Below are positions 1 to 43,266 of a stretch of 64,000 bases of DNA, piece by piece. Origin of the DNA: Scyliorhinus canicula. Lineage: Eukaryota. Numbering within the stretch: the first letter of the stretch is position 1; every line of letters starts with the position of its first letter. The translations under genes and the position numbers were made by a program. The notes below the pieces were generated by a model, which was not told the origin of the DNA, searched no databases, and worked only from the letters and a program-made list of their open reading frames with translations. The stretch covers positions 115,839,316 through 115,903,315 of the forward strand of contig NC_052155.1 in NCBI RefSeq assembly GCF_902713615.1, in the 5' to 3' direction.

Positions 1-2946
1 TCTGGGAGGCGCTGAAGGCGGTGGTTCGGGGGAGTTGATCTCCATTTGGGCCCACAGGGAGAGAGAGGAGCAGAGAGAAAGGGAGAGATTGGTGGGGGAG
101 ATGGTGAGGGTGGACAGGAGGTACGCGGAGGCCCCGGAGGAGGGATTGCTGAGGGAGCGGCGCAGCCTTCGTGCTGAGTTCGACTTGTTGACCACCAGAA
201 AGGCAGAGGCTCAATGGAGAAAGGCTCAGGGTGCGGTGTACGAGTATGGGGAGAAGGCGAGTAGGATGCTGGCACACCAGCTCCGTAAGCGGGATGCGGC
301 TAGGGAGATTGGTGGAGTTAAGGACCGGGGAGGAAATGTAGTGCGGAGGGGGGTAGACATTAATGGGGTCTTCAGGGACTTTTATGAGAGACTATATCGG
401 TCCGAACCTCCGGCGGAGAAGGGGGGGATGGGGCGCTTTTTGGACCGGCTGAGATTCCCGAGGGTGGAGGAGGAACGGGTGGAGGGTCTGGGGGCGCCAG
501 TTGAGCTTGAGGAGCTGGTTAAAGGGTAAGGGAACATGCAGTCAGGGAAGGCGCCGAGGCCGGATGGGTTCCCGGTTTAATTTTACAAGGCGTATGCAGA
601 CCTGCTGGGCCCCCTGTTGGTTAGGACCTTTAACGAGGCGAGGGAGGGGGGGCTTTTCCCCTGACGATGTCTCGGGCGCTGATCTCTTTGATCCTTAAGC
701 GAGACAAGGATCCCCTGCAGTGTGGGTCATACAGGCCGATCTCACTCCTGAATGTGGATGCCAAGTTGTTGGAAAAGATCTTAGCCACGAGGATAGAAGA
801 TTGTGTGCCGCAGGTTATCCACGAGGATCAAACGGGGTTTGTGAAGGGGCTGGCAGCTGAACACTAATATACGGAGGCTCTTGAACGTTATTATGATGCC
901 AGCGGTGGAAGGGGAGGCGGAGATAGTGGTGGCGCTAGATGCGGAGAAGGCCTTTGATAGGGTCGAGTGGAGGTACTTGTGGGAGGTGCTGGAAAGGTTC
1001 GGGTTTGGGGAGGGGTTTGTCAGTTGGGTGAGGCTGTTGTATGAGGCCCCGATGGCGAGTGTGGCCACGAATAAGAGGAGGTCGGAGTATTTTCGACTAT
1101 ACCGAGGGACGAGGCAGGGGTGTCCCCTGTCCCCCCTACTTTTTGCGCTGGCAATTGAACCCTTGGCTATGGCGCTGAGGGAGTCGGGGGATTGGAGGGG
1201 GCTGGTCCGGGGTGGGGAGGGGCACCGAGTGTCGCTCTATGCGGATGACCTATTGTTGTATGTGGCGGACCCGGTGGGGGGAATGCCGGCGGTGATGGGG
1301 ATTCTCCGGGAATTTGGGGATTTCTCAGGGTATAAGCTTAACTTTGGGAAAAGCAAGCTGTTTGTGGTACACCCGGGAGACCAGGAGGGGGGGGGGGGGT
1401 TGGGAGGCTCCCACTGAAAAGGGCGGAGAGGAGCTTCAGGTACTTGGGGGTTCAGGTGGCCAGGAGCTGGGGGGCCTTGCATAAGCTAAACCTCACAAGG
1501 CTAGTGGAGCAAATGGAGGAGGAGTTTAAGAGGTGGGGCATGCTGCCGCTGTCTTTGGCGGGTAGGGTGCAGTCAATCAAGATAACGGCGCTCCCGAGGT
1601 TTCTGTTCTTGTTCCAGTGCCTCCCCATCCTTATCCCAAAGGCCTTTTTTAGGCGGGTTAACAGGAGCATTACGGGGTTTGTGTGGGCACACGGGACTCC
1701 AAGGGTGAGACGGGTGTTCTTGGAGCGGGGATGGGGGCTGGCATTGCCCAACCTCTGTGGGTATTATTGGGCTGCCAACTCAGCGATGGTGCGTAAGTAG
1801 GTAATGGACGGGGAGGGGGTGGCAGGGATGAGGCTGGAGATGGCATCCTGTGTGGGTACGAGCCTGGAAGCGCTGGCAACGGCGCCGCTGCCGCTCCCTC
1901 CGACGAGGTATACCACGAGCCCGGTGGTGGCAACTACCCTCAAGATTTGGGGGTAATGGAGGCGGCACAGGGGGGAGGTGGGGGCCTCGATGCGGTTCCC
2001 GATACGGGGGAACCACCGGTTTGTTCCGGGGAGAATTGATGGCGGGTTCCTGAGTTGGCACAGGGCAGGTGTCAGGAGGCTGGGGGACCTGTTCATAGAC
2101 AGGAAGTTTGCGAGGCCTGGGTGAGCTGGAAGGGAAGTTCAGGTTCCTCCCGGGGAACACCTTTAGGTACATGCAAGTAAGGGCGTTTGTCAGGCGGCAG
2201 GTGGCGGGGTTCCCCCTGCTGCCGCCGCGTGGGGTCCAGGACAGGGTGCTCTCGGGGGTATGGGTTGGAGAGGGGAGGATCTCGGAAGTGTACCAGGTGA
2301 TGCAGGAGGTAGACGAGGCCTCGGTGGAGGAGCTGAAAGATAAATGGGAGGAGGAGCTGGGTGTGGAGATTGAGGAGGGGACGTGGGCGGATACCCTAGA
2401 AAGGGTGAACTCCTCCTCTTCGTGTGCGAGGCTTAGCCTCATACAGTTTAAGGTACTGCATAGGGCTCATATGACCGGGACAAGGATGAGCCGGTTTTTT
2501 GGGACCGAGGACGGGTGTATTAGGTGCTCAGGGAGCCCAGCAAACTATGGCCACATGTTCTGGACATGCCCAGCGCTGGGGGAATTTTGGAAGGTTGTAG
2601 CAAGGACGGTATCGAGGGTGGTAGGATCCAGGGTCAATCCAGGCTGGGGACTCGCAATATTTGGGGTTGCAGTGGAGCCGTGAGTGCAGGAGGCGAAAGA
2701 GGCCGGTGTTCTGGCCTTTGCGTCCCTAGTAGCCTGGCGGAGGATTCTTCTTCAGTGGAAGGATGCGAGGCCCCCAAGCATGGAGGCCTGGGTCAACGAT
2801 ATGGCGGGGTTTATTAAATTGGAGAGGGTGAAATTTGCCCTAAGGGGGTCAGTGCAGGGGTTTTTCAGGAGATGGCAACCATTCCTAGATCTCCTGGCAG
2901 AACGGTAAAAACAAAAGGTCAGCAGCAGCAGGAACCGGGGTGGGGG
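1..2946 (+). mobile_element. L1-clade LINE, ORF2 (linker, RT, C-terminal Cys region), degraded; 5' part outside the window, 3'UTR cut off in a G-rich tract
   Basis: ORF fragments with GSYRPISLLNVDAK, DAEKAFDRVEW, GTRQGCPLSPLLF, LYADD and C-terminal CxRC...HMFWTCP; stop at 2908; multiple stops and frameshifts; near-identical to the copy at 45134-48996. Confidence 0.93.
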
Positions 2947-5900
2947 CGAAACCCCCGTGGTAGTACCCCTGGAAAAACCAAATAGCCGCTCGTGATGGGT
3001 CTGGTTGGTGGCCGTACATTGGAGGGACCTAAGAGCATGGAGCGCGTCGGGGAGGACCTCCTGCCAATGGGAGGTCGGGAGCTTCCTGGACCGGAAGGTC
3101 AGTAGGATGGTCTTCCAGACCATCGCGTTCTCCCTCTCCACCCGCCCGTTCCCCCTGGGGTTATAGCTGGTAGTCCTGCTCAAGGCGATGCCCTTTATGA
3201 GCAGGTACTGACGCAGCTCGTCACTCATAAAGGACGAACCCCTATCGCTGTGTACATAGCTGGGGAAACCAAACAGGGTGAAGATACTATGCAGGGCCCT
3301 AATGACTGTGGGAGGTCATATCGGGGCACGGGATAGCAAAGGGGAAGCGAGAGAACTCGTCTATTACGTTCAGGAAGTACACATTCCTATTGGTCGAGGG
3401 GAGTGGCCCTTTGAAATCGATACTTAGGCGTTCAAAGGGCCGGGAGGCCTTGACCAGGTGGGCCCTGTCTGGTCTATAGAAGTGCGGTTTGCACTCCGCA
3501 CAGATCGGGCAATCCCTGGTGATGGCTTTTACCTCCTCGGTGGAGAAAGGCAGGTTTCGGGCTTTGATGTAGTGGGCGGGCCGGGTGACCCCCGGGTGGC
3601 AGAAGTCATTGGGGATAGCTTTGAGGCGGTCGTCTTGTGCGCTGGCGCACGTGCCACGGGACAGGGCATCTGGGGGCTCGTTAAGCTTCCCCGGTCGGTA
3701 CATGATATCGTACTTGTAGGTGGAGAGTTCGATCCTCCACCGTAGGATCTTATAGTTTTTAATTTTGTCCCTTTGTGAGTTGTCAAACATAAAGGCAACC
3801 GATCTTTGGTCGGTGATGAGGGTGAACCTCCTACCTGCGAGGTAGTGCCTCCAGTGACGTATAGCTTCCACGATGGCTTGTGCTTCCTTTTCGACCGAGG
3901 AGTGTCGAAGTTCCGAAGCGGAGAGGGTTCGGGGGCAAAAGGGCAACTGGTCTCCCTGCCTTACTTAGTGTGGCAGCGAGAGCAACCTCTGAGGCATCGC
4001 TCTCTACCTGGAAAGGGACGGATTCATCCACCGCCTGCATGGCCGCTTTGGCGATGTCTTCCTTGATACGAGTGAAGGCCTGACGAGCCCATCCGATAGA
4101 GGGAAGAGTGTGGCCTTAAATAGTGGGCGGGCTTTGTCCGCATACTGAGGGACCCACTGGGCATAATATGAGAAAAGCCCCAGGTACCTTTTGAGGGCCT
4201 TGGGACAATGAGGGAGAGGGAGCCCAGGTCGGGGCCCAGGACTCCGTTTTCCATGACATAGCCGAGGATGGCTAGCCTGGTCATGCGGAAAATGCATTTC
4301 TCCGTGTTGTAAGTAAGATTAAGTTTCTGGGCAGTTTGGAGAAATCGATGGAGGTTAGCGTCGTGGTCCTGCTGATCATGGCCACAGATGGTGACGTTGT
4401 CCAAGTACGGAAACGTGGCCCGCAGCCCGTACTGGTCCACCATTCGGTCCATTGCTCGTTGGAACACTGAGACCCCATTCGTGACGCCAAAGGGAACCCG
4501 GAGGAAGTGGAAGAGGCGGCCGTCAGCCTCAAACGCCGTGAAGTGGCGGTCCTCCGGGCGGATTGGGAGCTCGTGGTATGCAGACTTCAGATCCACCGTG
4601 GAGAAGACGCGATAGTGGGCGATCTGATTCACCATGTCTGCAATCCTGGGGAGGGGGTACGCATCGAGGAGCATGAACCGATTAATGGTTTGGCTATAGT
4701 CCACTACCATTCGGAATTTTTCCCCGGTCTTGACGACCACCACCTGAGCTCTCCAGGGGCTATTACTGGCCTCTGTGATCCCCTCACGTAGGAGCCTATG
4801 GACCTCGGTTCTGATAAACACCCTGTCCTGCAGGCTGTACCGCCTGCTGCGAGTGGCTACGGGTTTGCAGTCCGGCGTGAGATTGGCAAAGAGTGGAGGG
4901 GGGTCGATTTTTAGCGTAGCAAGGCTGCAAATAGTGAGCGGGGGCAAGGGCCCGTCGAAGCTGAGTGTGAGTCTTTTCAGGTTACACTGGAAGTCGAGTC
5001 CCAGTAGAGTGGGGCGCAGAGTTCAGGGAGCACGTACAGCTGGAAGTTCGAGTAGCTAGTGCCCTGGATCGTTAGGGTCGCAACCGTGCGCCCTTGGAGG
5101 TGAACAGAGTGAGAGCCCGAAGCGAGGGAGATAGTTTGCCGTGCAGGGAAGATAGAGAGCGAACAGCGTCTTACCAGATCTGGGTGTACGAAGCTCTCGG
5201 TGCTCGGAGTCGAAGAGGCACGATGTCCTGTACCCGTTGATTTCAATGGTCATCATGGAGTTGCGGAGATGTTTCGGATGCGACTGGTCCAAAGTCACCG
5301 CGCTGAGTTGCGGGTAGTCAGCGGCTGGATCAACTGTGCTGGAGTGGCCCCGTGATGACTGCCCTCTGAATTCGTAGCCTTCGAGGCGATTTTCTGAGCG
5401 AGGAGAGGAAGGATACCAAGATGCCCGCCCCCGTGGATCGCACGTGGCGGGCGGCGAGGAAGATGGCGGCCCCCATGAGTCGCACGTGGCCGGCCGCGTG
5501 GAGGGGGGTTGCCAAGATGGCGGCCCCCATGAGTCGCATGTGTCGTTTGGGGGCGGAGTCGGAGTACAGGCCGCAGCATTTCGGGGCCTGCGGGCCTGTG
5601 GAGTTTGAAAACGAGTGCTCTGGGAGGCTGCGGAAGAGTTAGGAGATGGGGCCTGCTTTGCCAGGCAGACCCGGGCATAGTGTCCCTTGCGACCGCAGCT
5701 GCTGCAGGTCGCGTTACGGGCCGGGCAATACTGCCGTGGGTGCTGGGGCTGCCCGCAAAAATGGCATCCTGGAGCTGCGTGGTGGCTGGGTGGCCGCGCG
5801 GCGCAGGCCTGGGGAAGTCGCTGGTCGGGGGCCCAGGATGGGGTCGCTTGGTCCGCGGGGAATGAGGTGAGGCTGCGGAACGAGACCAATTCTACCGTGT

Positions 5901-6691
5901 CCTCTAGATTCTGGGCCCCTTTTTCGAGCAACCGCTGGCGTACATAGTTTGATCTGAGGCCTGCCACGTACACATCCCCGACGGTGAGCTCCATGTGCTG
6001 TTCGGCTGATACAGCCTGGTAATTACAGTCCCGAGCTAAAGTCTTTAAGTCCCGCAGGAATTCTTCCAACGACTCCGCGGGGCGCTGGCGGCGGGTTGTA
6101 AAAATATGGCGCGCGTAGACCTCATTGATGGGCCTCATGTACATTCGATCTAGCATGGCTAGGGCCCCCGTATACGAGTTAGTACTATTGAGTTGAGTAG
6201 ATATACGGTGGCTCACCCTTGCGTGCAGTAGATTGAGTTTCTGCTCCTCTGTAGTTTCTGGAGTACTTGGATTCAGCTAGGTAGGCCTTAAAACATCTGA
6301 GCCAGTGTTGAAAGATTTCTCTTGCCTCTGCAGCCTGCGGGTCGAGTTCTAGTCAGTCAGGTTTGAGGGCTGATTCCATAGTCGTTTTCTTCTAGTTTCC
6401 TAAGACTATTAAATTGATGTGACCATCAATTCACAAGACACGTGGTTGAAAGTGAACAGTGGTTTTAATAGTCTTACAACAGAACCTGCCTACGACGTGA
6501 TGAACTGGCAGGCAGGCTCACGACTGCAAAGCTTTATACTTCCGGTTAGTGGGAGGAGGCATGGGCGGAGCCCAGTACAAACTCATCTCCCCCAATGGGC
6601 AGAGCCACGCAACTGCTCGTATACCGAGCTAACATGAATACAGAACATCATATAACAACAGTGTGAATTACGCGGAATGTGATTCACCACA
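2947..6691 (-). mobile_element. Ty3/Gypsy (Mag-like) LTR retrotransposon A: 5' LTR, gag-PR-RT-RH-IN, 3' end missing
   Basis: Gag ATG at 6379; double CCHC knuckle CHFCGQPQHPRQYC..CSSCGRKGHYARVC; protease LFDS; RT YLDN; RNase H; integrase; frameshifted. Confidence 0.93.
6415..6691 (-). repeat. 5' LTR of element A (277 bp)
   Basis: TGTGGTGAA...CATCA termini on the minus strand; TATAAA and ATTAAA inside; immediately upstream of gag. Confidence 0.85.
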
Positions 6692-10501: not shown

Positions 10502-10606
10502 ATGTAACGTAATGTAAATCGCTTATTGTCACAAGTAGGCTTCAATGAAGTTACTGTGAAAAGCCCCTAGTCGCCACATTCCGGCACCTGTTCGGGGAGG
10601 CTGTTA
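10502..10606 (-). mobile_element. 5'-truncated SINE inserted in gag of B
   Basis: Reverse complement of the 3' half of the SINE at 18438-18626, with a short repeat tail. Confidence 0.8.
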
Positions 10607-10781
10607 CGTGGCTGGAGTCAGGTCCAACTACGTCAGACAGCGCCTGCTCGAGAAAGGCGCCCTCGACCTAGAAGAGACGGTAAAACTAGCCACCTCCCTA
10701 GAAGTAGTGTTCCAAAGCCTCAACGCATTCCCGTCGGATCACCCGACCCCCCTCGTGGACCCCCGACTAGAGAGTACCTCA

Positions 10782-11165
10782 GGCCTGTGCCACGTGGCTG
10801 CCCGCCCAACCCAGGGGGCTACCCTGCTATTTCTGCGGCTAGCACCAGCACCAAGGCAAGGCCTGTGCCGCGCGGCTGCCCGCCCAACCCAGGGGGCTAC
10901 CCTGCTATTTCTGCGGCTAGCACCAGCACCAAGGCAAGGCCTGTGCCGCGCGGCTGCCCACCCAACCCAGGGGGCTATCCTGCTATTTCTGCGGCTAGCA
11001 CCAGCACCAAGGCAAGGCCTGTGCCGCGCGGCTGCCCGCCCAACCCAGGGGGCTACCCTGCTATTTCTGCGGCTAGCACCAGCACCAAGGCAAGGCCTGT
11101 GCCGCGCGGCTGCCCACCCAACCCAGGGGGCTACCCTGCTATTTCTGCGGCTAGCACCAGCACCC
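10782..11165 (+). repeat. 78-bp tandem repeat, about 5 copies, within gag of B
   Basis: Unit GGCCTGTGCCGCGCGGCTGCCC...CACCAAGGCAA; 26-aa periodicity in the ORF track. Confidence 0.95.
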
Positions 11166-12335
11166 CAGGCAGCACTGCCCGGCTCAGAATGCGAACTGCA
11201 GCGACTGCGGCAAAAAGGGAGACTTTGTCAAAGTTTGCCTGGCCTGGTCCAAATCCTCCAAATCGCAGGCCCGACTCTTGGACTCAGGCCCGCAGACCCC
11301 GCAGTGTGGCTGCGTGCCAGTCGGCTCTGCCCCCTCCGGACGCGTCATCTGCCTCGTGTTGTCCGTGGGGGCAGTCATTTTCAACTCCGCACAACACGTG
11401 TAACTCATGGGGGCCCCCACCTTGGACGTCATCTTCCTCCCTGCCCGACACGTGCGGCCAACGGGAGCTGCCATCTTGGCCGCCATCTGCAATGCCGCCT
11501 GACACATGTGACCGACAGGGGCAGCCATCTTGGGACCACCCCATCACCTCCGACCACGCCGGCTACCCGCAACTCGGCACGGTCACTCTTGACCAGTCAT
11601 GGCCAAAACACCTCCAGAACGCCATGATGACCGTCCGGGTCAATGGACACGAAACGCCTTGCCTGTTTGACTCTGGGAGCATGGAGAGCTTCATTCACCC
11701 AGATTCGGTAAGGCGCTGTTCGCTCCAAATCTTCCCTGCACTTGAAACAATCTCCCTCGCTTCCGGATCGCACTCAGTGCAGATCCAGGGGTACACTGTC
11801 GCGAACCTTGCAATACAGGGCGCTGAGTATGCCAATTTTAAACAATATGTACTCCCCGATCTCTGCGCTCCTCTCCTGTTGGTACTGGACTTCCAGTGCA
11901 ACCTCAGGAGCCTAACCCTGAAGTTTGGCGGGCCCCTACCCCCACTCACCGTATGTAGCCTCGCGACCCTGAAGGTCGACCCTCCCCCGCTCTTCGCAAA
12001 TCTCACCGCCGACTGTAAACCAGTCGACACCAGAAGCAGGCGGTACAGTATCCAGGACAGGACTTTTATGAGGTCCGAGGTCCAGCGATTCTTGCGGGAA
12101 GGGATCATCGAGGCCAGTAATAGTCCCTGGAGAGCTCAGGTGGTGGTCATCAGGACTGGGGAGAAGAAGCGGATGGTTGTAGGCTACAGCCAAACCATAA
12201 ACCGGTACATGCACCTCGATGCGTACCTCCTCCCCCGGATAGCGGACATGGTTAATCAGATCGCACACTACCGAGTCTTTTCCACGGTGGATCTGAAGTC
12301 CGCATACCACCTGCTCCCAATCCGCCCAGAGGGCT

Positions 12336-15300
12336 TGTGGTGAGATAACCACTGTAGTTATGTGTACTGCAGTAGGGGGATGTATGCCTGTACCTGTAAT
12401 ACAGGTTCCTCTGGTCAGCCCCTGCCGGCTAGCTCCGCCCACAGGGAGCTTATGTATAAATGTATGAGAGCTGCTCAGACCCTCAGTCTACAGTTGCGGA
12501 TGGAGGGACAACATCGTACAGCAATAAAGCCTCTATTGTACTAGTCTCCCGGCTTTGAGTATAATTGTTAGCGCCACAATTTATTGCTGTACGATTTCCC
12601 AGCCACCATGGACATCAGAATCAAGCCTGACCGTCTGCAGCTGGATCCACATTCGCCTCACGCCAGAAAAGACTTTGATCACTGGCTCGCAGTCTTCGAG
12701 GCCTACATCTCTTCAGCACACCCTCCCCCGACGGAGGCTCAGAAAAAGCAACTCCTGTACTCCAGACTTAGCTCCAGCGTCTTTCCGTTCATTCGAGATG
12801 CGACCGACTACACCGCAGCTATGGAACTGCTCAAGGAGAATTATGCACCATCGACGAACACCCTGTTTGCGAGGCATCAACTTTCTACTCGCGTCCAGCA
12901 GCCGGGTGAGTCGATTGAGGACTTCTGGAGGGCCCTTATACCTCTGGTACGAGACTGCGACTGCCGGGCCCTCAGAAGCCGCGGAACATTCGGATTTACT
13001 CATGCGCGATGCCTTCGTTACAGGCATTGCATCGGACCCCATCCGGCAACGACTGCTGGAAGGGGTCGCCCCCGACCTCGCGGCCGCAAAGGCCCTGGCG
13101 CTCTCCATGACGGCCGCCTCCCGTAGTGCGCACACTTACTCCGCTAGCCACTCGGCCCACCCGTCCTACCCCTCGTGGACCCCGCAAACGGCTCCCCAGG
13201 CCCATCCGTCCCACCCCTCGTGGACCCCGCAAACGGCCCCCCCAGCAGCCGCCCCCGCGCACTATGCCTGCGCTGCCCGCCGCACCGCACCCCCTGGGGG
13301 TCCCCACTGTTACTTCTGCGGCCAACAGAAGCACCCTCGCCAACGCTGCCCGGCCCGCACAGCGACCTGCAAAGCTTGTGGAAAGAAAGGCCACTTTGCA
13401 GCGGTGTGTCAGTCCCAGACGGTCGCCGCTATCGCGCCGCCGGTCCCCACGCCTCAGCCGCTCCCTCAATGGGCCCCGCCGTCCGCTTCCCCCGACCCCA
13501 CGTGCAATCAGTGGGCGCCGCCATCTTTTGCTGCCCCCGCCACGTGCGCCCCATGGGCGGCGCCATCTTCATCCACCACAGCCATGTGCGTTCCATGGGC
13601 GCCGCCATTTTGTTCCGACCCCACAACGTGCGCTCCATGGACGCCGCCATTTTACCCACAGGTACTGCGGATGCCGCCATCTCGTCTCCAGGGGCCGCCA
13701 TCACGGGACACGGGTCGCTACCGCTCCTCGTCGGACTCATCTGACTCAACCGCCGACCAACCACTGCTCGCCTCCGTTACGCTCGACCAGTCCCGTCCTC
13801 GCAACCTGGCACCCTCTTCCACATCGGTGCTGGTCAACGGCCATGTGACCTCCTGCCTCATCGACTCCGGGAGCACCGAGATCTTCGTCCACCCGGACAC
13901 GGTAAGGCGCTATTCCCTTGCGATCCATCCCGCCGACCGGCAGATCTCCCTTGCCTCCGGTTCCCACTCTGTCCCGATCCGGGGTTTCTGCCTGGTTAAA
14001 CTCACTGTACAGGGTGTTGAATTCGACCGTTTCCGTCTGTACATTCTCCCCGACCTCTGCACTTCACTCCTACTAGGCCTGGATTTCCAGTGCAATCTCC
14101 AGAGCCTCACCCTCAAATTCGGTGGACCCCTACCTCCCCTCACCGTTTGCGGCCTCGCGACCCTCAAGGTCGAGCCCCCCTCCCTCTTTGCCAATCTGAC
14201 TGTGGATTGCAAGCCCGTCGCCACCAGGAGCAGATGGTACAGCACCCAGGACAAGGCCTTCATCAGGTCCGAAGTCCAGCGGCTGCTTCGGGAGGGTATC
14301 ATCGAGGCCAGCAACAGCCCTTGGAGAGCCCAGGTGGTAGTGGTTAAGACCGGGGAGAAGCACAGGATGGTCGTGGACTACAGCCAGACCATCAACCAGT
14401 ACACGCAGCTCGACGCGTACCCCCTCCCCCGCATTTCTGATATGGTCAATCAGATTGCACAGTACCGGGTCTTCTCTACTATTGACCTGAAATCCGCCTA
14501 CCACCAGCTCCCCATCCGTAAATCTGACCGTCCCTACACTGCCTTTGAGGTGGACGGTCGTCTGTACCAATTTCTGAGGGTTCCCTTCGGCGTCACGAAT
14601 GGGGTCTCGGTCTTTCAGCGAGAAATGGACCGAATGGTTGACCGGTACGAATTGCAGGCCACCTTCCCGTACCTCGACAATGTCACCATCTGCGGCCATG
14701 ACCAGCAGGACCATGATGCCAACCTTTATAAATTCCTCCACACCGCATCTCTCCTTAATCTCACGTACAACAAGGAGAAATGCGTGTTCCGCACAGACCG
14801 CTTAGCCATCCTTGGCTACGTAGTCCAAAACGGACTACTGGGGCCCGATCCCGACCGCATGCGCCCCCTCATGGAGCTCCCAATTCCCCACTGCCCCAAG
14901 GCCCTCAAACGCTGCCTTGGGTTTTTCTCTTATTACGCCCAGTGGGTCCCGCAATACGCAGACAAGGCCCGGCCACTTATCCAGTCCACACATTTTCCCC
15001 TCTCGGCCGAGGCACAACAGGCCTTCGCCTGCATTCGATCTGACATAGCCAGGGCGGGGATGCACGCCGTAGACGAGACTCTGCCTTTCCAAGTAGAGAG
15101 CGACGCTTCAGATGTCGCCCTTGCCGCCACGCTGAATCAGGCCGGCAGACCCGTGGCATTCTTTTCACGCACCCTCCACGCCTCCGAAATTCGGCATTCC
15201 TCTGTCGAAAAGGAAGCCCAGGCAATCGTTAAAGCGGTGCGGCACTGGAGGCATTACCTGGCCGGCAGGAGATTCACTCTCCTCACTGACCAACGGTCGG

Positions 15301-16949
15301 TAGCCTTCATGTTCAACAACACGCAGCGGGGCAAGATCAAGAATGACAAAATCTTGCGGTGGAGAATCGAGCTCTCCACCTTTAACTACGAGATCTTGTA
15401 TCGCCCCGGCAAGCTCAACGAGCCCCCAGACGCCCTCTCCCGAGGTACATGTGCCAGTGCACAAGTGAACCAGCTCCGTGCCTTGCACGACAGCCTTTGC
15501 CATCCGGGGGTCACCCGCTTGTACCATCTGATCAAAGCCCGCAATCTGCCTTACTCCGTCGAGGAAGTACGGATAGTCACCAGAGACTGCCAGATCTGTG
15601 CGGAGTGCAAGCCGCACTTCTACCGGCCAGATCGCGCGCGCCTGGTGAAAGCATCCCGCCCCTTTGAACGCCTCAGCGTGGACTTCAAAGGGCCCCTTCC
15701 CTCTACCGACCGCAACACCTACATCCTTAGTGTGGTCGATGAATTTTCTAGGTTCCCCTTTGCCATCCCATGCCCAGATATGACGTCTGCCACCGTCATC
15801 AAGGCCCTGGATTCCATTTTCGCCCTGTTCGGTTTCCCCGACTATATCCACAGTGACAGGGGATCCTCATTCATGAGCGATGAGCTGCGTCAGTTCCTGC
15901 TCAGCAGGGGTATCGCCTCCAGCAGGACGACCAGCTACAACCCCCGGGAAACGGGCAGGTAGAGAGGGAGAACGGGACGGTATGGAGGGCTGTCCAGCTG
16001 GCCCTACGGTCCAGGAACCTCCCAGCCGCTCGCTGGCAGCAGGTCCTCCCTGACGCGCTCCATTCCATTCGGTCGCTACTGTGCACCGCAACTAACAGTA
16101 CACCCCATGAACGTGTTTTTGCCTTCCCTAGGAAGTCCACATCCGGAGTGTCGCTCCCGACTTGGCTCACGACTCCGGGCCCAGTCCTTCTCCGTAGGCA
16201 TGTACGGCACCACAAGGCGGAACCCCTGGTGGACAAAGTACGCCTTCTCCAGGCCAACCCTCAGTATGCCTACGTGGAGTTCCCCGACGGCCGCCAGGAC
16301 ACAGTCTCGCTCCGGGACCTGGCTCCCTCAGGTGCCGATCCCATGCCCACACCCCTTCCTGCGCCAACCCCAGCGCCCCCCTATTCGTCCCCATCAGGTC
16401 CATCCCTCATGCCCCTGCCCACCCTGGAGGACATGGAAGATTTTGGCTTGCTCTCGGAGTCATCCCGCCAGCAGCCAGCACCAACACCGCCAGCACCTGC
16501 ACCATCGGGGCCATCACCGCCTGTGCCGACGTCACCACCACAGCTACGCCGCTCACAGCGGAACGTCCGACCACCGATTCGGCTCAACCTGTAACCTGCT
16601 AACCGGATGGACTCTTGATTTTCCTTGTTGGACCCTCTTGTAAATAGCATCCTTTGTATTAGAGTTACATGTCACCCCCGCCGGACTCATTTTTACAGGG
16701 GGTGAATGTGGTGAGATAACCACTGTAGTTATGTGTACTGCAGTAGGGGGATGTATGCCTGTACCTGTAATACAGGTTCCTCCGGTCAGCCCCTGCCGGC
16801 TAGCTCCGCCCACAGGGAGCTTATGTATAAATGTATGAGAGCTGCTCAGACCCTCAGTCTACAGTTGCGGATGGAGGGACAACATCGTACAGCAATAAAG
16901 CCTCTATTGTACTAGTCTCTCGGCTTTGAGTATAATTGTTAGCGCCACA
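12336..16949 (+). mobile_element. Full-length young Ty3/Gypsy (Mag-like) element C
   Basis: 243-bp LTRs at 12336-12578 and 16707-16949 with 2 substitutions; TG..CA ends; 5-bp TSD GGGCT (12331-12335, 16950-16954); PPT ACAGGGGGTGAA at 16695-16706. Confidence 0.97.
12608..16594 (+). pseudogene. Single gag-pol polyprotein of element C (~1328 aa reconstructed), broken by two 1-nt indels
   Basis: gccaccATGg at 12608; frames switch near 12975 and near 15948; CCHC x2, LIDSGS protease, RT YLDN, RNase H, HHCC plus DDE integrase. Confidence 0.9.
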
Positions 16950-17789
16950 GGGCTGCCACTACACGGCCTTTGAGGATGACGGCCACCTCTTCCACTTCCT
17001 CCGGGTCCCCTTCGGCATCACAAACGGGGTCTCTGTCTTCCAAAGAACGACGCACCGAATGGTGGACCAGTACAGGCCGCGGGCCACATTTCCGTACCTG
17101 GACAACGTTACCATCTGCAGCCACGACCAGCAGGACCATGACGCCAACCTCCAGAAATTTCTCCAAACCGCCCAAGCCCTCAACCTCACTTATAACAAGG
17201 AGAAATGCGTTTTCCGCACAACCAGACTAGCCATCCTTGGCTATGTCATGGAAAACAGAGTTCTAGGGCCCGACACCATGCGCCCCCTCCTGCAGCTTCC
17301 TCTTCCCCACGGCCCCATTGCCCTGAAAAGGTGCCTCGGGTTCTTTTCCTATTATGCCCAGTGGGTCCCCAACTATGCGGACAAAGCCCACCCACTGATC
17401 AAAGCTACCATCTTTCAATTGGTGGCTGAGGCCCGCCAGGCCTTCAGCCGCGTCAAGGCAGATATTGCCAAAGCCGCGATGCACGCGGTGGACGGGTCCA
17501 TCCCCTTCCAGGTGGATAGCGACACGTCAGAGGTCCCACCCTCAATCAGGCGGGCAGGCCAGTAGCATGTTTCTCCCATATCCTCAACGCCTCCGAAATT
17601 CAACACTCCTCAATTGAAAAAGCCCAAACCATCGTGGAAGCTGTACGGCACTGAAGGCACTACCTCACTGGTAGGAGTTTCATCCTCGTCACCGACCAAC
17701 GGTCAGTAGCCTTCATGTTCGATAATACACAGCGGGGACAGCGCCCTGTCTGGCACATGCGCCAGCGGGCAAGATGACCGCTGCTCATG

Positions 17790-19539: not shown

Positions 19540-22500
19540 GGACTTCCAGTGGCGGTCATGAAGGTGTGGTCGCACACAGGGTGGCTCCTCCTACTTGAAG
19601 GTGTTGGTTTTGGCCCCTTCTACCCGAACTTTGGGAAATTTTGGCAGAAAGGTTGTGCGGAGAGTGGAGGGGGATTAGTTCTCCCCTAGATGGGCATGTC
19701 AGCGGGTTATCAAACCCGACAGCGAGAGCCCTGTCTAAGGAGCTTGAGGAGATTCATGGCGCAGCATCAATTGCGAAAATTTGGTGGGGGGGTCATTGAC
19801 TGGAAAAATGCCAATGGAGCAATTGATGGCTTCATTAAGGATGAATTTCAACAGCAGTGTGAAGAAATGTAGAGTGACTGGTCAAAGACAATTGAGGGGG
19901 CAGTGGCACCTGTTCGAGGGCCTTTGGAACTGGTGGATAAGTGTCTGGAGGTACAGGGGTTGACGATCCAGGAGGTGGAGAAGGTGGTGTCTGACCAGAG
20001 TGACCGGATTGTGAGGGTGGAAGCAGAGATGGCGATCCTGGAGGACATGCGTAAAATTCTGCGAGCAACGGTCCAGGCAACAAAATCTGAGGTTTGTGGA
20101 GGGAGGGGAGGGGACGAGTGCAATTGGCTATGTCGTGAGGATGCTGGCCAGGTTTGTGGAAGAGAAGGTGCTGGACAAGGCCTCAGAGGTAGATCTGGCC
20201 CATAGGTCCCTGAGGCAGAGGCCAAGATGGGCAGCAGCGGCGGTGATTGTGTGTAGTGAAGTTCCAGGGCAAGGAAAATATTCTGAGGTGGGCCAGGGCG
20301 CAGCAGGATTGTGATTGGGAAGGAGACCAAATCCAGATTTTAAAGGATATTGGTGTGGAGCTGGCCAAGAAATGGGCAGGGTTCAACAAGGCCAAGAGAG
20401 TGTTGTCCCTGGCCAGACTTTAGGTCACTTGAGAGCCAGGAATATTACTTTTGGAAACCAGGAGAGGTGAATGGCTTTATTAAGAAGCATAAACTGGAAG
20501 CTGGGGGAGGGCTGAAGGGGGATTGTGAGTGCAAGTTCTGTCTTCTCAGAAGTGGGGGGGAGGGGGGGGTGGAAGAGCAGGCGCTGGAGGAGCCATTAAG
20601 GCTAAAGGAGGTGATGGAATGAATTGGTATGACGCAGTCGTGTAAGGCGCAGAAGCCGGATGGCTTCCTGGCAGAATTTTAGGAGCAGTTCACAACGGAG
20701 TTGCCCCCCCCCCACTTTTTGGGCATGTTTAATGGTGGAGAAGGCGTAGGCGTCAGTTTCGCTGATCGCGAAAAAGGGGAAGGATCCATTGGAGTGCGGG
20801 TCCTATAGGTCCATCTCACTGTTGTAAATCGACGTGAAAGTTCTGGCAAAGGTATTGGCGAGAAGGCTGGAGGGATGTTTGCTGGAGGTGATCTCAGAGG
20901 ATCAGATAGGGATTGTGAAGGGGAGGAGCTCTCTATTAATACTAGGAGGTTGTTAAACGTAAATAAGACCCCGTCGGCGGGGTTGGAGGGCTGGAGGTGA
21001 TTGTGTCAGTGGACACAGAGAAGGCCTTTGACCGGGTAGAGTGGAGGTATTTGTTTGAAATTCTGTGGCGGTTTGGGTTCGGACGAGGTTTGTGGCGTGG
21101 GTTCAGTTGCTATATGCCTCCCGCATTGCAAGTGTGGTAATGAATGAGATGAACTTGGGTATTTTGGGCCGCACAGGGGTCGAGGCAGGGGTGTCCACTG
21201 CCCCGCTATTGTTCACATTGCCGATTGATCCCCAAGCGATGGTACTTTGGGCCTCGGCTGAGTGGCGGGGAATTGAGAAGGTGGGGGCAGGGAGCCCCGA
21301 GTGTCATTGTATGCCGTTTACCTGTTGCTGTTCGTAACGGACCCATTAGAAAGCATGGGCAGAATCATGAGCTTACTGGAGAGATTAGAGGCCTTTTCGG
21401 GCTATGAATTTAATGTAGGGAAAAGCGAGATGTTCCAGGTGAGTGCAGCAGGGCGAGGAACGACCCTGGGGACACTGCATTTAAGGTGGCACGGTGTGGT
21501 GAATGAGATTCACATGGTATTATAAGTTACCAATGTCACTCTGTTCCAAGTATATATATATGTATCAATATTGTAAGTGCAGTTGCACTACCTGACCACC
21601 AGGGGGAGTAGCTCTGGGAGTACTCGAGAGTTTGTACTGGGCTCCCCCCTTGGCTCCGCCCAGAGCTCCTCCCCCTGGAGCTGCTGTATAAAGATCCGTG
21701 CCACAGAGTCAGCCAGCCAGTTCACCGAAAGTTCAACGGCTAACAGGCTGGCTCTGTTGTAAGTATATTAAAACCACTATTCTAATCCTACAAGCACGAG
21801 TCCGTAGAATTAATGGTTCCATCACAAGGGAGTGGTTCTGGTACCTGGGGATTCAGGTAATGCACGGGTGGGCCACGATGCACAAGTGGAATTTGACGGG
21901 ATTGGTGGAGGAGGTTAAGGGGGATGCAGAGGCTAAAGAAATTTTTTCCCACTGACTGAGATGTTTTAAGGCCTACCTGGCAGAAGCCAGCACCGCGGGA
22001 ACAACGGAGGAACAAAAACTCAGCCTACTGCACGCGAGGGTAAGCCACAGAATCTCCACACAGCTAAATCTGGCCGGTTCTTACACCGCAGCGCTGGAGA
22101 TATTGGACAAATTTACGTTAGGCCCATTAACGAGGTTTATGCACGCCACGTGTTTACGACTCGCCGTCAGCGGCCTACAGAAACGCTTGCCGAATTTGTT
22201 AGGGAACTGAACAATCTCTCCAATGACTGTAATTATCAAGCCGTTACCGCGGCTGAACATAAGGAGCTTGCTGTGCGGGACGTTTTCGTAGCGGGCCGTA
22301 GATCGAACTACGTGCGCCAAAGATTGCTAGAAAAGGGGGCCCAGGACTTGAGATACTACTGTGGAGGCTGCTACCACTATGGAAGTCTCCTTGCGCAGCC
22401 TCACCTCCTTTCCCACGGACCCCGCGACCTCATCGTGGACCCCCGACCAACAATCCCCCCAGGCCTGTGCCGCACGGCCCCCCAGCTACCGCGCTGCCAA

Positions 22501-25500
22501 AGCCAGTTACTCTGCTGCCCCAGCCAGCTACTCAGCCTGCCATTTCTGTGGCCAAAGCCAGCACCCGCGGCAGCACTGCCCAGCCTGATCCGCGACCTGC
22601 AGCAGCTGTGGGAAGAAAGGCCACTATGCCAGAGTGTGCCTCGCGAAAAGGGCCCCAGTTTCTAACTCCCCAGTAGAGAGAACAAATCGCTCCCAACACC
22701 AGCGGGCCCGAAACGCTGCGGCCTACGCCCCGACTCCGCCCCCTCCCGCCACGTGCGATCCATGGGGGCCGCCATCTTGGCAAACCCCCACCACGCGGCC
22801 GGCCACGTGCGACTCATGGGGGCCGCCATCTTCCTCGCCGCTCACCACGTGCGATCCACGGGCCCCATCTGCATCTCCATGCTCAGATAGCTCATCTGAA
22901 GACTACGACTTCCCCGGGCACTCATCACGCGGCCCGCAACTCAACGCGGTCACCCTAGATGAATCCCGCCCCAAGCACCTACGAAGTTCGATGGCGGAGG
23001 TCCAGATCAACGGGTACAGCACGCCATGCCTCTTTGACTCCGGGAGCACAGAGAGCTTTATACACCCAGAGCTGGTAAGACGCTGTTCGCTTCCTATTTT
23101 TCCTGTGAGCCAAACTATCGCCCTCGCTTCGGGCTCCCACTCAGTCCAAATCCAAGGACGCACCGTCACTACGCTCACAATTCGAGGCGCTAGTTATTCA
23201 AAATTTAAACTTTATGTCCTGCCTGACCTCTGCGTGCCACACTTATCAGGCCTGGAATTCCAGTGCAACCTCAAGAGTCTCACCCTCAGCTTCGGCGGGC
23301 CCCTGCCCCCTCTCACTATCTGCAGCCTAGCCACGCTGCGCATCTCCCCCCCATCTCTCTTCGCCACTCTCACTCCAGATTGCAAACCAGTAGCTACACG
23401 CAGCAGGCGACACAGCCTACAGGATAGGGTCTTTATCCGATCGGAGGTCCGACGGCTGCTCAGTGAGGGGATCATAGAGGCCAGTAATAGCCCCTGGAGA
23501 GCTCAGGTGGTGGTCGTCAAGACTGGGGAAAAGTTTTGCATGGTCGTCGACTATAGTCAGACCATAAATCGCTTTACGCTCCTAGACCCGTATCCCCTCC
23601 TCAGAATTGCATACATGGTTAACCAAATCGCCCAATATCGGCTATTTTCCACGGTGGATCTGAAGTCTGCATACCACCAACTCCCAATCCGCCCGGAGGA
23701 CCGCCACTACACAGCGTTCAAGGCCGATGGCCGCCACTTCCATTTCCTCCGGGTTCCCTTCGGCATCACTAACGGGGTTTTGGTGTTCCAACGAGCAATG
23801 GACCGAATGGTAGACCAGTACCGGCTGCGGGCCACGTTTCCGTATCTGGACAATGTTGCCATCCGCGGCTATGACCAGCAGGACCACAAGGCCAACCTCC
23901 ACCGTTTTCTCCAGACGGCACAGGAATTAAACCTAACTTATAACAAGGAGAAATGCGTTTTCCGCACAAACAGACTGGCCATCCTCGGCTACGTCGTGGA
24001 GAACGGAGTCCTGGGCCCAGACCCGGACCGCATTCGCCCCCTCTTAGAACTCCCCCTCCCTCATTGCCCAAGGCCCTCAAACGGTGCTTGGGGTTCTTTT
24101 CATACTACGTCCAGTGGGTCCCTCAATATGCGGACAAAGCCCGCCCACTCTTTAAGGCCAAACGATTTCCCCTGTCTGCTGAGGCGCGCCAGGCCTTCAG
24201 CTGCATCAAGGAGGACATCGCCAAAGCAGCCATGAGGGCGGTGGATGAATCCACTCCCTTTCAGATTGAGGGCGACGCCTCAGAGGTAGCTCTAGCAGCC
24301 ACTTTAAATCAGGCAGGGAGGCCCGTTGCATTTTTCTCCCGTACCCTATCCGCTTCAGAACTCCGACACTCCTCTGTCGAGAAGGAAGCACAAGCCATCG
24401 TGAAGGCTGTTCGTCAATGTAGGCACTACCTCGCAGGTAGGAGGTTCACCCTCATCACCGACCAACGATCGGTTGCCTTTATGTTTGACAACTTGCAAAG
24501 GGGCAAAATAAAAAATGATAAAATCCTTCGGTGGAGGATCGAACTCTCCACCTATAGTTACGATATTAAATATCGACCGGGGGAGCTCAACGAGCCCTCG
24601 GATGCCCTATCCCACGGGACATGCGCCAGCGCGCAGATCAGCTGTCTGAAAGCCATCCACGATGACCTCTGCCATCCAGGGGTCACCCGGCTCGCCCACT
24701 ACATCAGAGCCCGAAACCTGCCTTTCTCCAACGAGGAGGTAAAAGCGGTCACCAGGGACTGCCCGATCTGTGCAGAGTGCAAACCGCACTTCTATAGACC
24801 AGACAGGGCCCACCTGGTCAAGGCTTCTAGGCCCTTTGAATGCCTTGCGATCAATTTCAAAGGGCCACTCCCTTCCACTAACAAGAACATTTATTTCCTC
24901 AACATCATCGATGAGTTCTCCCGATTCCCTTTTGCCATTCCGTGCCCCGACATGACCTCCCACACAGTCATTAGGGCCCTGCACAGTGTCTTCACCCTGT
25001 TCGGTTTCCCCAGCTACGTGCACAGCGACCGGGGTTCGTCCTTTATGAGCAACGGGCTGCGTCGGTACCTGCTCGACAAGGGTATCGCCTCGAGCAGGAC
25101 TACCAGCTACAACCCCAGGGGGAACGGGCAGGTGGAGAGGGAGAACGCGACAGTCTGGAAGACCGTCCTACTGACCCTCCGGTCTAGAAAACTCCAAGTC
25201 TCCCAATGGCAAGAAGTCCGCCCAGACGCGCTCCACACAATCAGATCCCTCCTCTGTACAGCGGCAAACCAACCCCCTCACGAGCGGCTCTTCATTTTTT
25301 CTAGGGGCACTACCACGGGGGTCTCACTTCCGGCGTGGCTGAGGACACCCGGCCCGGTTCTCCTGAGGAAGCACATCAGGGGGCACAAAACTGACCCCCT
25401 TGTTGAAAAGGTGCGCCTCCTCCATTCCAACCCCCAGTACGCATTTGTGGAGTTCCCGGACGGTCGCCAGGACACAGTATCCCTTCGGGACCTGGCACCC

Positions 25501-42397: not shown

Positions 42398-43266
42398 TAA
42401 GAAATGTATCTAATAACTGTAATATACAAGTTGTACTGTGACAGAGGTAGTTGGTGTTTTGAGGCAAGATTTGTCCTTACCACTACTAGAAACTGACAGG
42501 ATGACAATCCCCTGCCAGAGTGGCTCCCAGAGATAAAATATTTAATCAGCACATAAAGCAGATATTCCGCTGGAAGGTTCTCTCCTCACAGCCTCCCTCA
42601 AAGATACACAGTTCCAGTAACTGACTTTAGGATGCCTAACCCTAAACTAGTTAGAAAACAAGCCTTTGTCCCAGACAATCACCACTAACCAAATGATTGC
42701 AGTGGGCTGACCTGTTTCTTTACTTAAGCTCCAAAACTATTGACGTATTGGCACTGGTTTCATTCACAGAAATATTTTTTGTCCCGTTGTTTTCGCCTCG
42801 GGCTGTTCATTTATTTCCTGACGGCTCAAGCAGAATCATCAATAAATTAACACCATCTCCTGCTGAGAGACACAAATCCACCCTCAAATAGTGATAGCTT
42901 CTTTTCGGTAGTCTTCAAATTTTTAATTGCCCATGTATCCTCAAAAGGATTTATACCACACAAAAAAAGCATCACGTGGACCGTCCCTCTGAACTAATGG
43001 CTGGTCTGAAATCTCAAACAATTTCACACTTCCCGAGCGCCGCGGCAAATGGGCACTTGGGGCAAAGCAATTTCCGTGTCTCTTCTGCATTCTCTCTCCC
43101 CAGCCATTTTTTTTGACAGTTCATCATCACATGTGTCATTTTAATTTGGAGTTGGGGGCGAGGATGGATGGATGGAGTGACTCACATTAGCCACTTCCTC
43201 TTTCGAGCCCTGGGGGGGTTTGGGGTGAACTATGGATAGAGGGGATTGTTAAAAGTATCACAGTGA

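What the first reader, a model, noticed from the sequence alone, without database searches (positions are those of the whole stretch)
14670..14681. Non-canonical RT active site YLDN conserved in all four Gypsy elements
Seen: FPYLDNV in A (4396-4407, minus), C (14670-14681), B (17095-17106) and D (23843-23854), with synonymous variation (AAC/AAT; CTC/CTG/TTG). Asn is therefore inherited and maintained, not decay. C has nearly identical LTRs, so an RT of this type was recently active. Known: RTs almost always have YxDD, and changing the second Asp to Asn in Ty1 leaves some polymerase activity but blocks transposition. Inference: a natural two-aspartate RT with compensating changes, possibly linked to the unusual priming.
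Basis: partly seen in the sequence, partly recalled or inferred. Interest (0 to 1): 0.75.

Follow-up and report, generated by a model that had tools for sequence, protein, structure and literature searches.

The report
Jumping-gene copier with YLDN active site
Four jumping-gene copies in this catshark DNA, and their relatives in rays, corals and sea anemones, carry asparagine in place of one of the three "essential" acidic residues of their DNA-copying enzyme, yet were evidently still jumping recently, which gives a natural test of what that residue does.

Summary
FPYLDN occurs four times (0.04 expected by chance), once in each of four Ty3/gypsy-type elements. The Asn aligns with the second Asp of Ty3's YLDD.

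It is not decay:
- The four copies are saturated at synonymous sites, yet RT-core dN/dS is 0.06-0.16.
- The other two catalytic Asp are invariant in 223 relatives.
- Intact N-type elements with identical LTRs, and in two cases 5-bp target duplications, exist in an electric ray and in coral-related contigs.

Among 225 relatives the site is D (116) or N (108), apart from one Lys. The state is uniform within each 90% cluster and switched at least 8 times; N monophyly is rejected (p-AU 1e-47).

I found no substitution that travels with N. The self-complementary primer site is shared by D-type insect relatives.

Natural YVDN is already known in nematode BEL/Pao elements. Ty1 D211N and Ty3 D214N keep polymerase activity but lose transposition. 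I found no paper describing YxDN in Ty3/gypsy.

None of the window's copies is intact; C has two frameshifts.

The parts
14670..14681 (+). YLDN codons of element C (TAC CTC GAC AAT). First motif-C Asp at 14676-14678; Asn at 14679-14681.
   Evidence: aligned to Ty3 YLDD
14484..14486 (+). Motif A catalytic Asp of element C (the D of S-T-I-D-L)
   Evidence: translation; invariant in 223/223 relatives
14346..14822 (+). RT core (Pfam RVT_1) of element C
   Evidence: residues 598-756 of the 12555-15959 ORF, E 9.7e-24
12336..16949 (+). Element C, complete LTR retrotransposon nested in element B. gag start ATG at 12608. Domain order gag knuckles-PR-RT-RNase H-IN. Broken by two frameshifts, in gag at about 12964-12978 and in the IN core at about 15905-15962.
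12336..12578 (+). 5' LTR of C (TG..CA termini). Holds TATAAA and the AATAAA-containing stretch 12513-12528 that is complementary to the primer site.
16707..16949 (+). 3' LTR of C, 241/243 identical to the 5' LTR. Preceded by the polypurine tract ...GGGGGTGAA. Target duplication GGGCT at 12331-12335 and 16950-16954.
12580..12595 (+). Primer-binding-site position of C: 16 nt exactly complementary to 12513-12528 within the LTR
4396..4407 (-). YLDN codons of element A
2941..6690 (-). Element A (decayed). pol homology 6006 down to 2941 with 2 stops and frame changes. 5' LTR about 6690 down to 6415, followed by a self-complementary primer site. No 3' LTR found.
17095..17106 (+). YLDN codons of element B
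10605..17741 (+). Element B (decayed and truncated). gag-PR-RT homology 10605-12325, split by the insertion of C, resuming at 16960-17741.
23843..23854 (+). YLDN codons of element D
21495..26278 (+). Element D. LTRs 21495-21924 and 25854-26278 (96.7% identical). pol 22249-25536 with one stop and a frameshift near 24013-24100.

Best explanation
YLDN is the native, working polymerase motif of an old, widespread and recently active lineage of Ty3/gypsy-type LTR retrotransposons. The lineage occurs in sharks, rays, stony corals and sea anemones, with D-type kin in arthropods and a nematode.

Shown: the Asn occupies the position of the second Asp of YxDD. The other two catalytic Asp (motif A and the first Asp of motif C) are invariant. 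The RT is under strong purifying selection. Intact copies with identical LTRs and target duplications exist. Within this clade the position takes only Asp or Asn, and it has switched between them many times at the level of whole families.

Inferred: catalysis runs on the two invariant carboxylates, which bind the two metal ions. The third residue plays a supporting role (positioning, second-shell contact or weak contact to a metal, pyrophosphate handling) that an amide can fill in this clade's active-site context. That context is unusual in both D and N forms: motif B reads PFGVTNGV, where Ty3 has PFGLVNAP, and motif C reads Y-L-D-[D/N]-[V/I]-T-[I/V]-C-G.

Also inferred: a single GAY-to-AAY transition makes the change. 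In all 8 N-type copies read as DNA the preceding Asp codon is GAC, so the D-to-N change would be a CpG transition, which gives a plausible high mutational supply.

The four window copies are themselves dead or damaged.
For: Position: phmmer alignment to Ty3 RT 4OL8, Pfam RVT_1, and an AlphaFold model with the pair at the hairpin turn and best Foldseek matches to CaMV, MLV and Ty3 RTs.

Selection: Nei-Gojobori dN/dS in the RT core is 0.06-0.16 among A-D with dS 0.6-2.5. Between hosts, pS is 0.66-0.92 against pN 0.10-0.28 over 400 RT-RNase H codons.

Breadth: 96 of 120 nearest database relatives carry Y[LMIV]DN, including all 13 elasmobranch-type proteins (they form a 14-row clade with C) and Actinostola. 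The clusters include Pocillopora, Acropora/Montipora and Porites proteins, with many full-length 1150-1200-aa members, and the state is uniform within each of 10 clusters.

Invariant partners: motif A Asp in 223/223 and the first motif-C Asp in 223/225.

Recent activity with intact ORFs and N: Narcine L002 (LTRs 100% identical, target duplication ATCTC, 1457-aa ORF), L007 (LTRs 99.4%, target duplication CTCTT), L008 (LTRs 100%).

Switching: 13 changes by parsimony on 225 sequences, at least 8 forced by well-supported branches. The AU test rejects one N clade (p 1e-47).

Biochemical plausibility: Ty1 D211N keeps polymerase activity (kpol down 223-fold, prefers Mn2+; PMC2148107). Ty3 D214N and D214E keep activity with reduced processivity (PMC5371799). 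Birnaviruses and Mononegavirales naturally carry Asn at this motif-C position (PMC4634563). Nematode BEL/Pao elements naturally carry YVDN (PMC554778, PMC9094657).
Against: No enzyme was assayed, so activity of the Asn form is inferred from evolution only. In the two tested yeast elements the same substitution abolishes transposition (PMC2148107, PMC5371799). None of the four window copies is intact. The database sample was seeded with an N-type and then a D-type query and shows only the best 120 hits each, so the D:N proportions are not unbiased. Hosts of many metagenomic contigs are unknown. The trees are quick LG+G4 searches without an outgroup, so the direction of change is not established. 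The CpG argument rests on 8 N-type and 3 D-type DNA copies.
Confidence: 0.85

Rival explanations
1. The YLDN elements are non-autonomous. Their RT is catalytically dead and they are copied in trans by related YLDD elements in the same genomes.
For: Ty1 D211N and Ty3 D214N block transposition (PMC2148107, PMC5371799). D-type relatives exist in the same broad clade. All four window copies are damaged.
Against: A dead RT would drift, but the RT core has dN/dS 0.06-0.16 at saturated dS and the two other catalytic Asp are invariant. All 13 elasmobranch-type database proteins plus C (a 14-row clade) are N-type, with no D-type member. N-type families hold many full-length intact copies with identical LTRs. 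The nearest D-type families are only about 60-65% identical in RT-RNase H.
Confidence: 0.05
2. One reading: Asn is made viable by specific compensating substitutions that accompany it, and it is functionally tied to the tRNA-independent, self-complementary primer site.
For: Ty1 D211N is partly rescued by second-site changes in RNase H (PMC2148107). Raw frequencies differ between the N and D groups at several columns, for example Pro against Ala three residues before the Asp-Asn pair. The whole clade that tolerates Asn has the unusual primer site.
Against: Across 8 phylogenetically independent D/N contrasts, no RT-RNase H column changes consistently. The best of 840 tests moves in 3.7 of 8 pairs, which is not significant. 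Sister families differing in D/N are otherwise very close, for example P0101 and P0105. The self-complementary primer site over the LTR poly(A) signal is present in 3 of 3 D-type elements (Ischnura, Pieris, P0075) and in 6 of 6 N-type elements checked. Power is low, and gag, PR and IN were not scanned.
Confidence: 0.1
3. The genomic Asn codon is read as Asp after A-to-I editing of the transcript (AAY read as GAY), so the protein has a normal YLDD.
For: None direct. It would be a single-base recoding, and copying an edited RNA would create D-type progeny, which could mimic N-to-D switches.
Against: If the template RNA were edited efficiently, new copies would be GAY. Yet young copies with identical LTRs keep AAY, and every 90% cluster is uniform in state. 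No transcript data were examined.
Confidence: 0.03
4. The Asn is post-insertion damage (CpG decay or deaminase-type G-to-A change) that happened independently in dead copies.
For: GAC|GAY to GAC|AAY is a CpG transition.
Against: The four copies differ at most synonymous sites yet share the Asn. The state holds across phyla and within clusters of intact copies.
Confidence: 0.01

Closest known systems
Ty3 reverse transcriptase of Saccharomyces cerevisiae (PDB 4OL8) and its D214N mutant
   Same: Best solved-structure relative by sequence (E 5e-44), with the same RT-RNase H fold. The window's Asn aligns with Ty3 D214. D214N and D214E keep polymerase activity in vitro, so D214 is not the metal-binding essential residue (PMC5371799).
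   Different: In Ty3 every change at D214 is lethal for transposition (PMC5371799). Here Asn is the natural state of families that have kept transposing. Motif B and the residues after motif C also differ (PFGVTNGV and DN-VT-IC-G against Ty3 PFGLVNAP and DD-IL-IF).
Ty1 (copia-type) RT mutant D211N
   Same: The same substitution of the second Asp of YxDD. [quoted passage not shown]
   Different: It is a laboratory mutant of another superfamily. Transposition is lost and only 5-10% is recovered by RNase H suppressors (PMC2148107). No matching co-varying RNase H change was seen here.
Nematode BEL/Pao (Belpaoviridae) elements Cer7-Cer13 and Atlas virus, with natural YVDN
   Same: A natural, lineage-wide Asp-to-Asn change at the same RT position in LTR retroelements with intact copies (PMC554778, citing Bowen and McDonald 1999; PMC9094657).
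   Different: A different family. The window's elements have Ty3/gypsy-type PR, RT-RNase H and IN Pfam domains and no BEL/Pao protease or DUF1758/1759 families. The hosts here are vertebrates and cnidarians. Repeated D/N switching was not reported in the passages of those papers that I read.
Motif C 'xDN' of Mononegavirales L proteins (GDNQ) and birnavirus VP1 (ADN)
   Same: Right-hand polymerases that naturally use Asn in place of the second motif-C Asp. For birnavirus, PMC4634563 reports a lower-activity enzyme that can use Mn2+ and becomes more efficient when Asn is changed to Asp.
   Different: These are RNA-dependent RNA polymerases, not reverse transcriptases. The resemblance is in mechanism only, not in family.
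'K02A2.6-like' gypsy elements of arthropods (NCBI naming), possibly the Mag lineage
   Same: D-type relatives at 51-58% RT-RNase H identity include a protein that NCBI calls 'uncharacterized protein K02A2.6-like' (P0180). They share the compact 4-5 kb single-ORF layout, short LTRs, the ...GGGTGAA polypurine tract and the self-complementary primer site.
   Different: Mostly YLDD (92 D against 12 N in that sample). Assignment to a named GyDB lineage such as Mag was not tested, because no reference sequences were on hand.
Tf1-type self-priming (Schizosaccharomyces pombe)
   Same: The primer-binding position is complementary to the element's own LTR-derived RNA rather than obviously to a tRNA.
   Different: Here the complementary stretch covers the LTR poly(A) signal about 40-50 nt from the LTR end, not a mapped 5' end of the transcript. 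No chromodomain was found in the IN tail of D. Priming was not tested, and it is the subject of another finding on this window.

Membership tests
Ty3/gypsy (Metaviridae) LTR retrotransposon | Direct LTRs with TG..CA ends and a short target-site duplication | tested here: met
   C has 243-bp LTRs, TG..CA termini and a 5-bp duplication, GGGCT. Narcine, Pieris and Acropora-cluster relatives also have 5-bp duplications.
Ty3/gypsy (Metaviridae) LTR retrotransposon | pol domain order PR - RT - RNase H - IN | tested here: met
   Pfam on the C ORF: aspartyl protease 424-511, RVT_1 598-756, RT_RNaseH 841-943, Integrase_H2C2 974-1020, rve 1034-1130
Ty3/gypsy (Metaviridae) LTR retrotransposon | RT most similar to Ty3-type RTs | tested here: met
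   Ty3 RT is the top PDB sequence match (E 5e-44). Foldseek's top matches are CaMV, MLV and Ty3 RTs.
Ty3/gypsy (Metaviridae) LTR retrotransposon | Canonical catalytic triad D ... Y-x-D-D | tested here: not met
   The motif A Asp and the first motif-C Asp are present. The last position is Asn in all four copies.
Ty3/gypsy (Metaviridae) LTR retrotransposon | Primer binding site complementary to a host tRNA 3' end | tested here: inconclusive
   The 16 nt after the 5' LTR are exactly complementary to the element's own LTR. No comparison with the host tRNA set was run.
BEL/Pao (Belpaoviridae) YVDN group of nematodes | BEL/Pao-type protease and gag Pfam families (Peptidase_A17, DUF1758/DUF1759) | tested here: not met
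   Only gag-asp_proteas and Asp_protease_2 plus Ty3-type RT_RNaseH domains were found
BEL/Pao (Belpaoviridae) YVDN group of nematodes | Asn in place of the second Asp of YxDD | tested here: met
   YLDN. This is a shared character, not shared ancestry.
Tf1/sushi chromoviruses (self-priming gypsy elements) | Chromodomain at the C-terminus of integrase | tested here: not met
   D's ORF through the end of IN (23953-25533) has no Chromo hit
Tf1/sushi chromoviruses (self-priming gypsy elements) | Primer site complementary to the first bases of the element's own transcript | tested here: inconclusive
   Complementarity to the LTR was found, but the transcription start is unknown and the partner covers the poly(A) signal
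Mag lineage / 'K02A2.6-like' gypsy elements | Placement with Mag, SURL or Jule reference RTs in a phylogeny | not tested
   No reference sequences were available. The only support is the NCBI name of relative P0180 and the compact single-ORF layout.

The most novel reading that the evidence does not exclude
The D/N position is a selected 'rheostat', not a neutral toggle. In this gypsy clade, families switch between a fast Asp enzyme and a slower Asn enzyme that may prefer Mn2+ or be less processive. Such tuning is reported for birnavirus polymerase (PMC4634563). The clade's shared peculiarities (self-complementary primer over the poly(A) signal, altered motif B) form a distinct replication strategy that makes the third carboxylate dispensable.
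Probability: 0.2. Interest if true: 0.7.

Novelty: new variant of a known kind. Interest (0 to 1): 0.5.

Why it matters
Textbooks treat the three aspartates of reverse transcriptase as a catalytic triad. Work on yeast Ty1 and Ty3 showed that the third one can be Asn for polymerisation but not for transposition, and left its role open. This clade offers natural, closely related pairs of transposition-competent elements that differ at exactly that residue, in several independent replicates. The role of the third carboxylate (metal choice, processivity, pyrophosphate release, RT-RNase H coupling) can therefore be measured on enzymes that evolution has already validated.

There is also a practical point. 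Annotation pipelines or curators that use 'YxDD intact' as a criterion for an active RT would wrongly call a large group of shark, ray and cnidarian elements dead.

Tried and rejected
1. A gag-seeded protein search (P0005 residues 1-560) was meant to collect only elasmobranch family members and look for D-type helpers. It failed: repeat-rich words swamped the candidates, and it returned only the query and a Narcine gene model containing a gag fragment. It says nothing about helpers.

2. The first dN/dS run was wrong because MAFFT dropped stop symbols and shifted the codons. It was redone with X at the stops.

3. Literature searches for YLDN, YVDN, YMDN, YIDN and YxDN as words or inside sequences, and for gypsy plus asparagine plus YXDD, found only the BEL/Pao reports. 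The original Ty1 and Ty3 mutagenesis papers (PMC114356, PMC546138) are not held, so I cite PMC2148107 and the review PMC5371799 instead.

4. No LTR pair was found for A or B in the window. No primer-site complement was found downstream of D's 5' LTR.

5. Decay, hypermutation and trans-mobilisation were considered and rejected on the selection data (see the rival explanations).

6. Assignment to a named GyDB lineage and a superfamily-wide census of YxDN were not possible with the libraries on hand.

7. The large representative-protein search, the complex prediction and the Atlas searches were not used, because the protein is not 'open' and no binding claim is made.
Full report
**Observation.** The six-codon pattern for FPYLDN occurs four times in the window: 4396-4413 on the minus strand, and 14664-14681, 17089-17106 and 23837-23854 on the plus strand. 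Chance would give 0.04 matches. The codons differ synonymously between copies: Leu is TTG, CTG, CTC and CTG; Asn is AAC, AAC, AAT and AAT; Tyr is TAC or TAT. A tblastn search with C's pol finds exactly four related elements and no fifth.

**What the elements are.** The open frame 12555-15962 carries aspartyl protease, RVT_1, RT-type RNase H, the integrase zinc domain and the integrase core, in that order. Two CX2CX4HX4C knuckles lie upstream. This is the Ty3/gypsy layout.

- Element C spans 12336-16949. Its 243-bp LTRs differ at 2 positions, have TG..CA ends and are flanked by a 5-bp duplication, GGGCT. C sits inside the RT of the older element B.
- C is not intact. Its gag starts at ATG 12608 in a perfect Kozak context and changes frame near 12964-12978. 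The integrase core changes frame between 15905 and 15962.
- D (21495-26278, LTRs 96.7% identical) has a stop and a frameshift.
- A (minus strand) has two stops and frame changes.
- B is split and truncated.
- The host is a catshark. The nearest protein is from Scyliorhinus canicula at 85% identity, and this scan's notes on the same genome say the same.

**Which residue is changed.** phmmer against all PDB sequences puts Ty3 RT first (4OL8, E 5e-44) and aligns 'yldn' with Ty3 'yldd'. The Asn therefore corresponds to Ty3 D214, the second Asp of motif C. An AlphaFold model of RT-RNase H (45-sequence alignment, mean pLDDT 84.6) places the Asp-Asn pair at the turn of the motif-C hairpin. Foldseek returns CaMV, MLV and Ty3 RTs as best matches.

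**Decay or selection.**
- The four copies are not recent duplicates. Synonymous divergence in the RT core is 0.6-2.5 substitutions per site, while dN/dS is 0.06-0.16; gag is looser at 0.25-0.40.
- Between hosts (catshark, electric ray, coral-type contigs), synonymous sites are saturated (pS 0.66-0.92) while pN is 0.10-0.28.
- A retrotransposon RT is conserved like this only if it is needed for propagation, so the Asn-bearing enzyme has been functional throughout.

**How widespread it is.**
- A word-indexed search with C's RT-RNase H region returned 120 best relatives, of which 96 have Y[L/M/I/V]DN and 24 have YxDD or YMDD. One, with Lys at the Asn position (Y-L-N-K), is likely dead.
- All elasmobranch-type proteins (Scyliorhinus, Hypanus, Narcine, Mobula) are N-type. 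With C they form one strongly supported clade of 14.
- N-type clusters also contain named proteins of the anemone Actinostola and of the corals Pocillopora verrucosa, Acropora, Montipora and Porites. Many members are full length, at 1150-1200 aa.
- In each of ten 90%-identity clusters checked, every member has the same state. The state is therefore a property of families, not of single mutated copies.
- A second search seeded with a D-type relative (Ischnura elegans) returned mostly arthropod elements: 92 D and 12 N.
- Over all 225 sequences the site is D in 116, N in 108 and K in 1. The motif A Asp is invariant (223/223) and the first motif-C Asp nearly so (223/225).

**Recent activity of N-type elements.**
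- The Narcine bancroftii locus L002 holds a complete element. Its LTRs are identical over 242 bp, the target duplication is ATCTC, and one uninterrupted 1457-aa gag-pol frame carries FPYLDN.
- A contig of the Acropora-type cluster (L007) has LTRs 99.4% identical, a target duplication CTCTT and an intact frame.
- A Tara Oceans scaffold of the Pocillopora-type cluster (L008) has identical LTRs and an intact frame.
- D-type relatives in Ischnura, Pieris and an unnamed host are equally young and intact.

**Repeated switching.** Maximum-likelihood trees of RT-RNase H were built without the D/N column. They need 12 changes of state on 121 sequences and 13 on 225; at least 7 and 8 of these are forced by branches with SH-aLRT of 95 or more. 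Holding all N-type sequences together costs 1147 log-likelihood units (p-AU 1e-47). Examples are the sister families P0101 (D) and P0105 (N), and the YMDD pair P0024/P0045 nested among N-type families. The trees have no outgroup, so the direction of each change is not shown. D is the state of Ty3 and of most arthropod relatives.

- Compensation: in 840 column-by-residue tests over RT-RNase H on phylogenetically independent D/N pairs, the best column moves with the state in only 3.7 of 8 pairs. Most columns do not move at all. Power is low, and gag, PR and IN were not scanned.
- D and N forms share a clade-wide unusual active-site context: motif B reads PFGVTNGV and motif C reads Y-L-D-[D/N]-[V/I]-T-[I/V]-C-G (Ty3 for comparison). 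This fits a permissive background better than N-specific compensation.
- Priming: in C the 16 nt after the 5' LTR are the exact complement of an LTR stretch that includes AATAAA. The same design, with different sequence, is in A, Narcine and the Acropora- and Pocillopora-type elements. It is also in the D-type elements of Pieris, P0075 and Ischnura. It is therefore a trait of the clade, not of the Asn. All these elements also share the polypurine tract ...GGGTGAA before the 3' LTR.

**A possible mutational route.** In all eight N-type copies read as DNA, the first Asp codon is GAC, so the ancestral GAC|GAY would contain a CpG and D-to-N would be a CpG transition. Two of three D-type copies read GAT GAT. 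The third, whose nearest relatives are N-type, reads GAC GAT. The sample is small and confounded with GC content, so this is only a lead.

**What is already known.**
- Natural YVDN was noted in C. elegans Cer7-12 by Bowen and McDonald, as cited in PMC554778, which left its activity open. It is listed as a distinguishing feature of nematode belpaoviruses in PMC9094657.
- Ty1 D211N keeps polymerase activity with kpol down 223-fold and prefers Mn2+. It loses transposition and is partly rescued by RNase H changes (PMC2148107).
- Ty3 D214N and D214E keep activity with reduced processivity, but all active-site changes are lethal for transposition. D214 is thought to support rather than perform metal binding (PMC5371799).
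- Birnaviruses and Mononegavirales naturally have Asn at this motif-C position. In birnavirus, Asn-to-Asp makes the enzyme more efficient (PMC4634563).
- My searches found no paper describing YxDN in Ty3/gypsy elements or D/N switching. The library lacks most subscription journals and Repbase, so this absence is weak evidence.
Notes on the same window concern the primer site.

**Verdict.** The most likely mechanism is two-carboxylate, two-metal catalysis, with the third position filled equally well by Asp or Asn in this clade's context (shown by evolution, not by assay). This is a new variant of a known kind: a Ty3/gypsy RT lineage with a natural YxDN motif, parallel to the BEL/Pao case. Its value is as a set of natural D/N enzyme pairs.

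The broken copies are described only by where they break.

Noticed in passing
window 12331-12335 and 16950-16954: Element C is inserted inside the RT coding region of the older element B, with a clean 5-bp target duplication, GGGCT. B's reading frame resumes directly after C's 3' LTR.
   Followed up: yes
window 12513-12528 with 12580-12595; 6400-6470 (minus); L002-L005, L007, L008: The primer-site position is an exact 13-16 nt complement of an LTR stretch covering the poly(A) signal. The design is kept, with different sequences, from insects (Ischnura, Pieris) to corals, rays and the catshark, in both D-type and N-type elements. The polypurine tract ...GGGTGAA followed by TG is also shared.
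   Followed up: partly
window 10703-11170; L002:4842-5381: Tandem repeats inside gag: five 78-bp units in element B and nine 45-bp units in the Narcine element. They fall in the proline-rich part of gag between the N-terminal domain and the zinc knuckles.
   Followed up: no
window 1-2900, 43259-45127, 45918-48540, 48998-49945: A GC-rich (0.57-0.59), strongly G-skewed (+0.35) repeat family, 74-82% identical between copies and unrelated to the gypsy pol. Its longest ORFs have no Pfam match.
   Followed up: partly
window 21495-21924 and 25854-26278: Element D's LTRs run about 95 bp past the point where the LTRs of A and C end. No complement of D's LTR poly(A)-signal stretch was found downstream of its 5' LTR, so D may lack the self-complementary primer site.
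   Followed up: partly
P0348 (Narcine bancroftii 'breast cancer type 1 susceptibility protein homolog isoform X2'): This gene model contains a stretch 99% identical to the gag region of the Narcine gypsy element. It is probably a transposon fragment annotated as an exon.
   Followed up: no
P0012, P0033: Full gypsy gag-pol proteins of this animal clade are filed in NCBI as proteins of bacterial metagenome-assembled genomes ('Rhizobiales bacterium', 'bacterium'). They are most likely eukaryotic contigs mis-binned.
   Followed up: no
window 12602-12611: The gag start codon of C lies in a perfect Kozak context (GCCACCATGG), 30 nt after the 5' LTR. The mechanically listed ORF that starts at 12555 is in another frame there.
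   Followed up: yes
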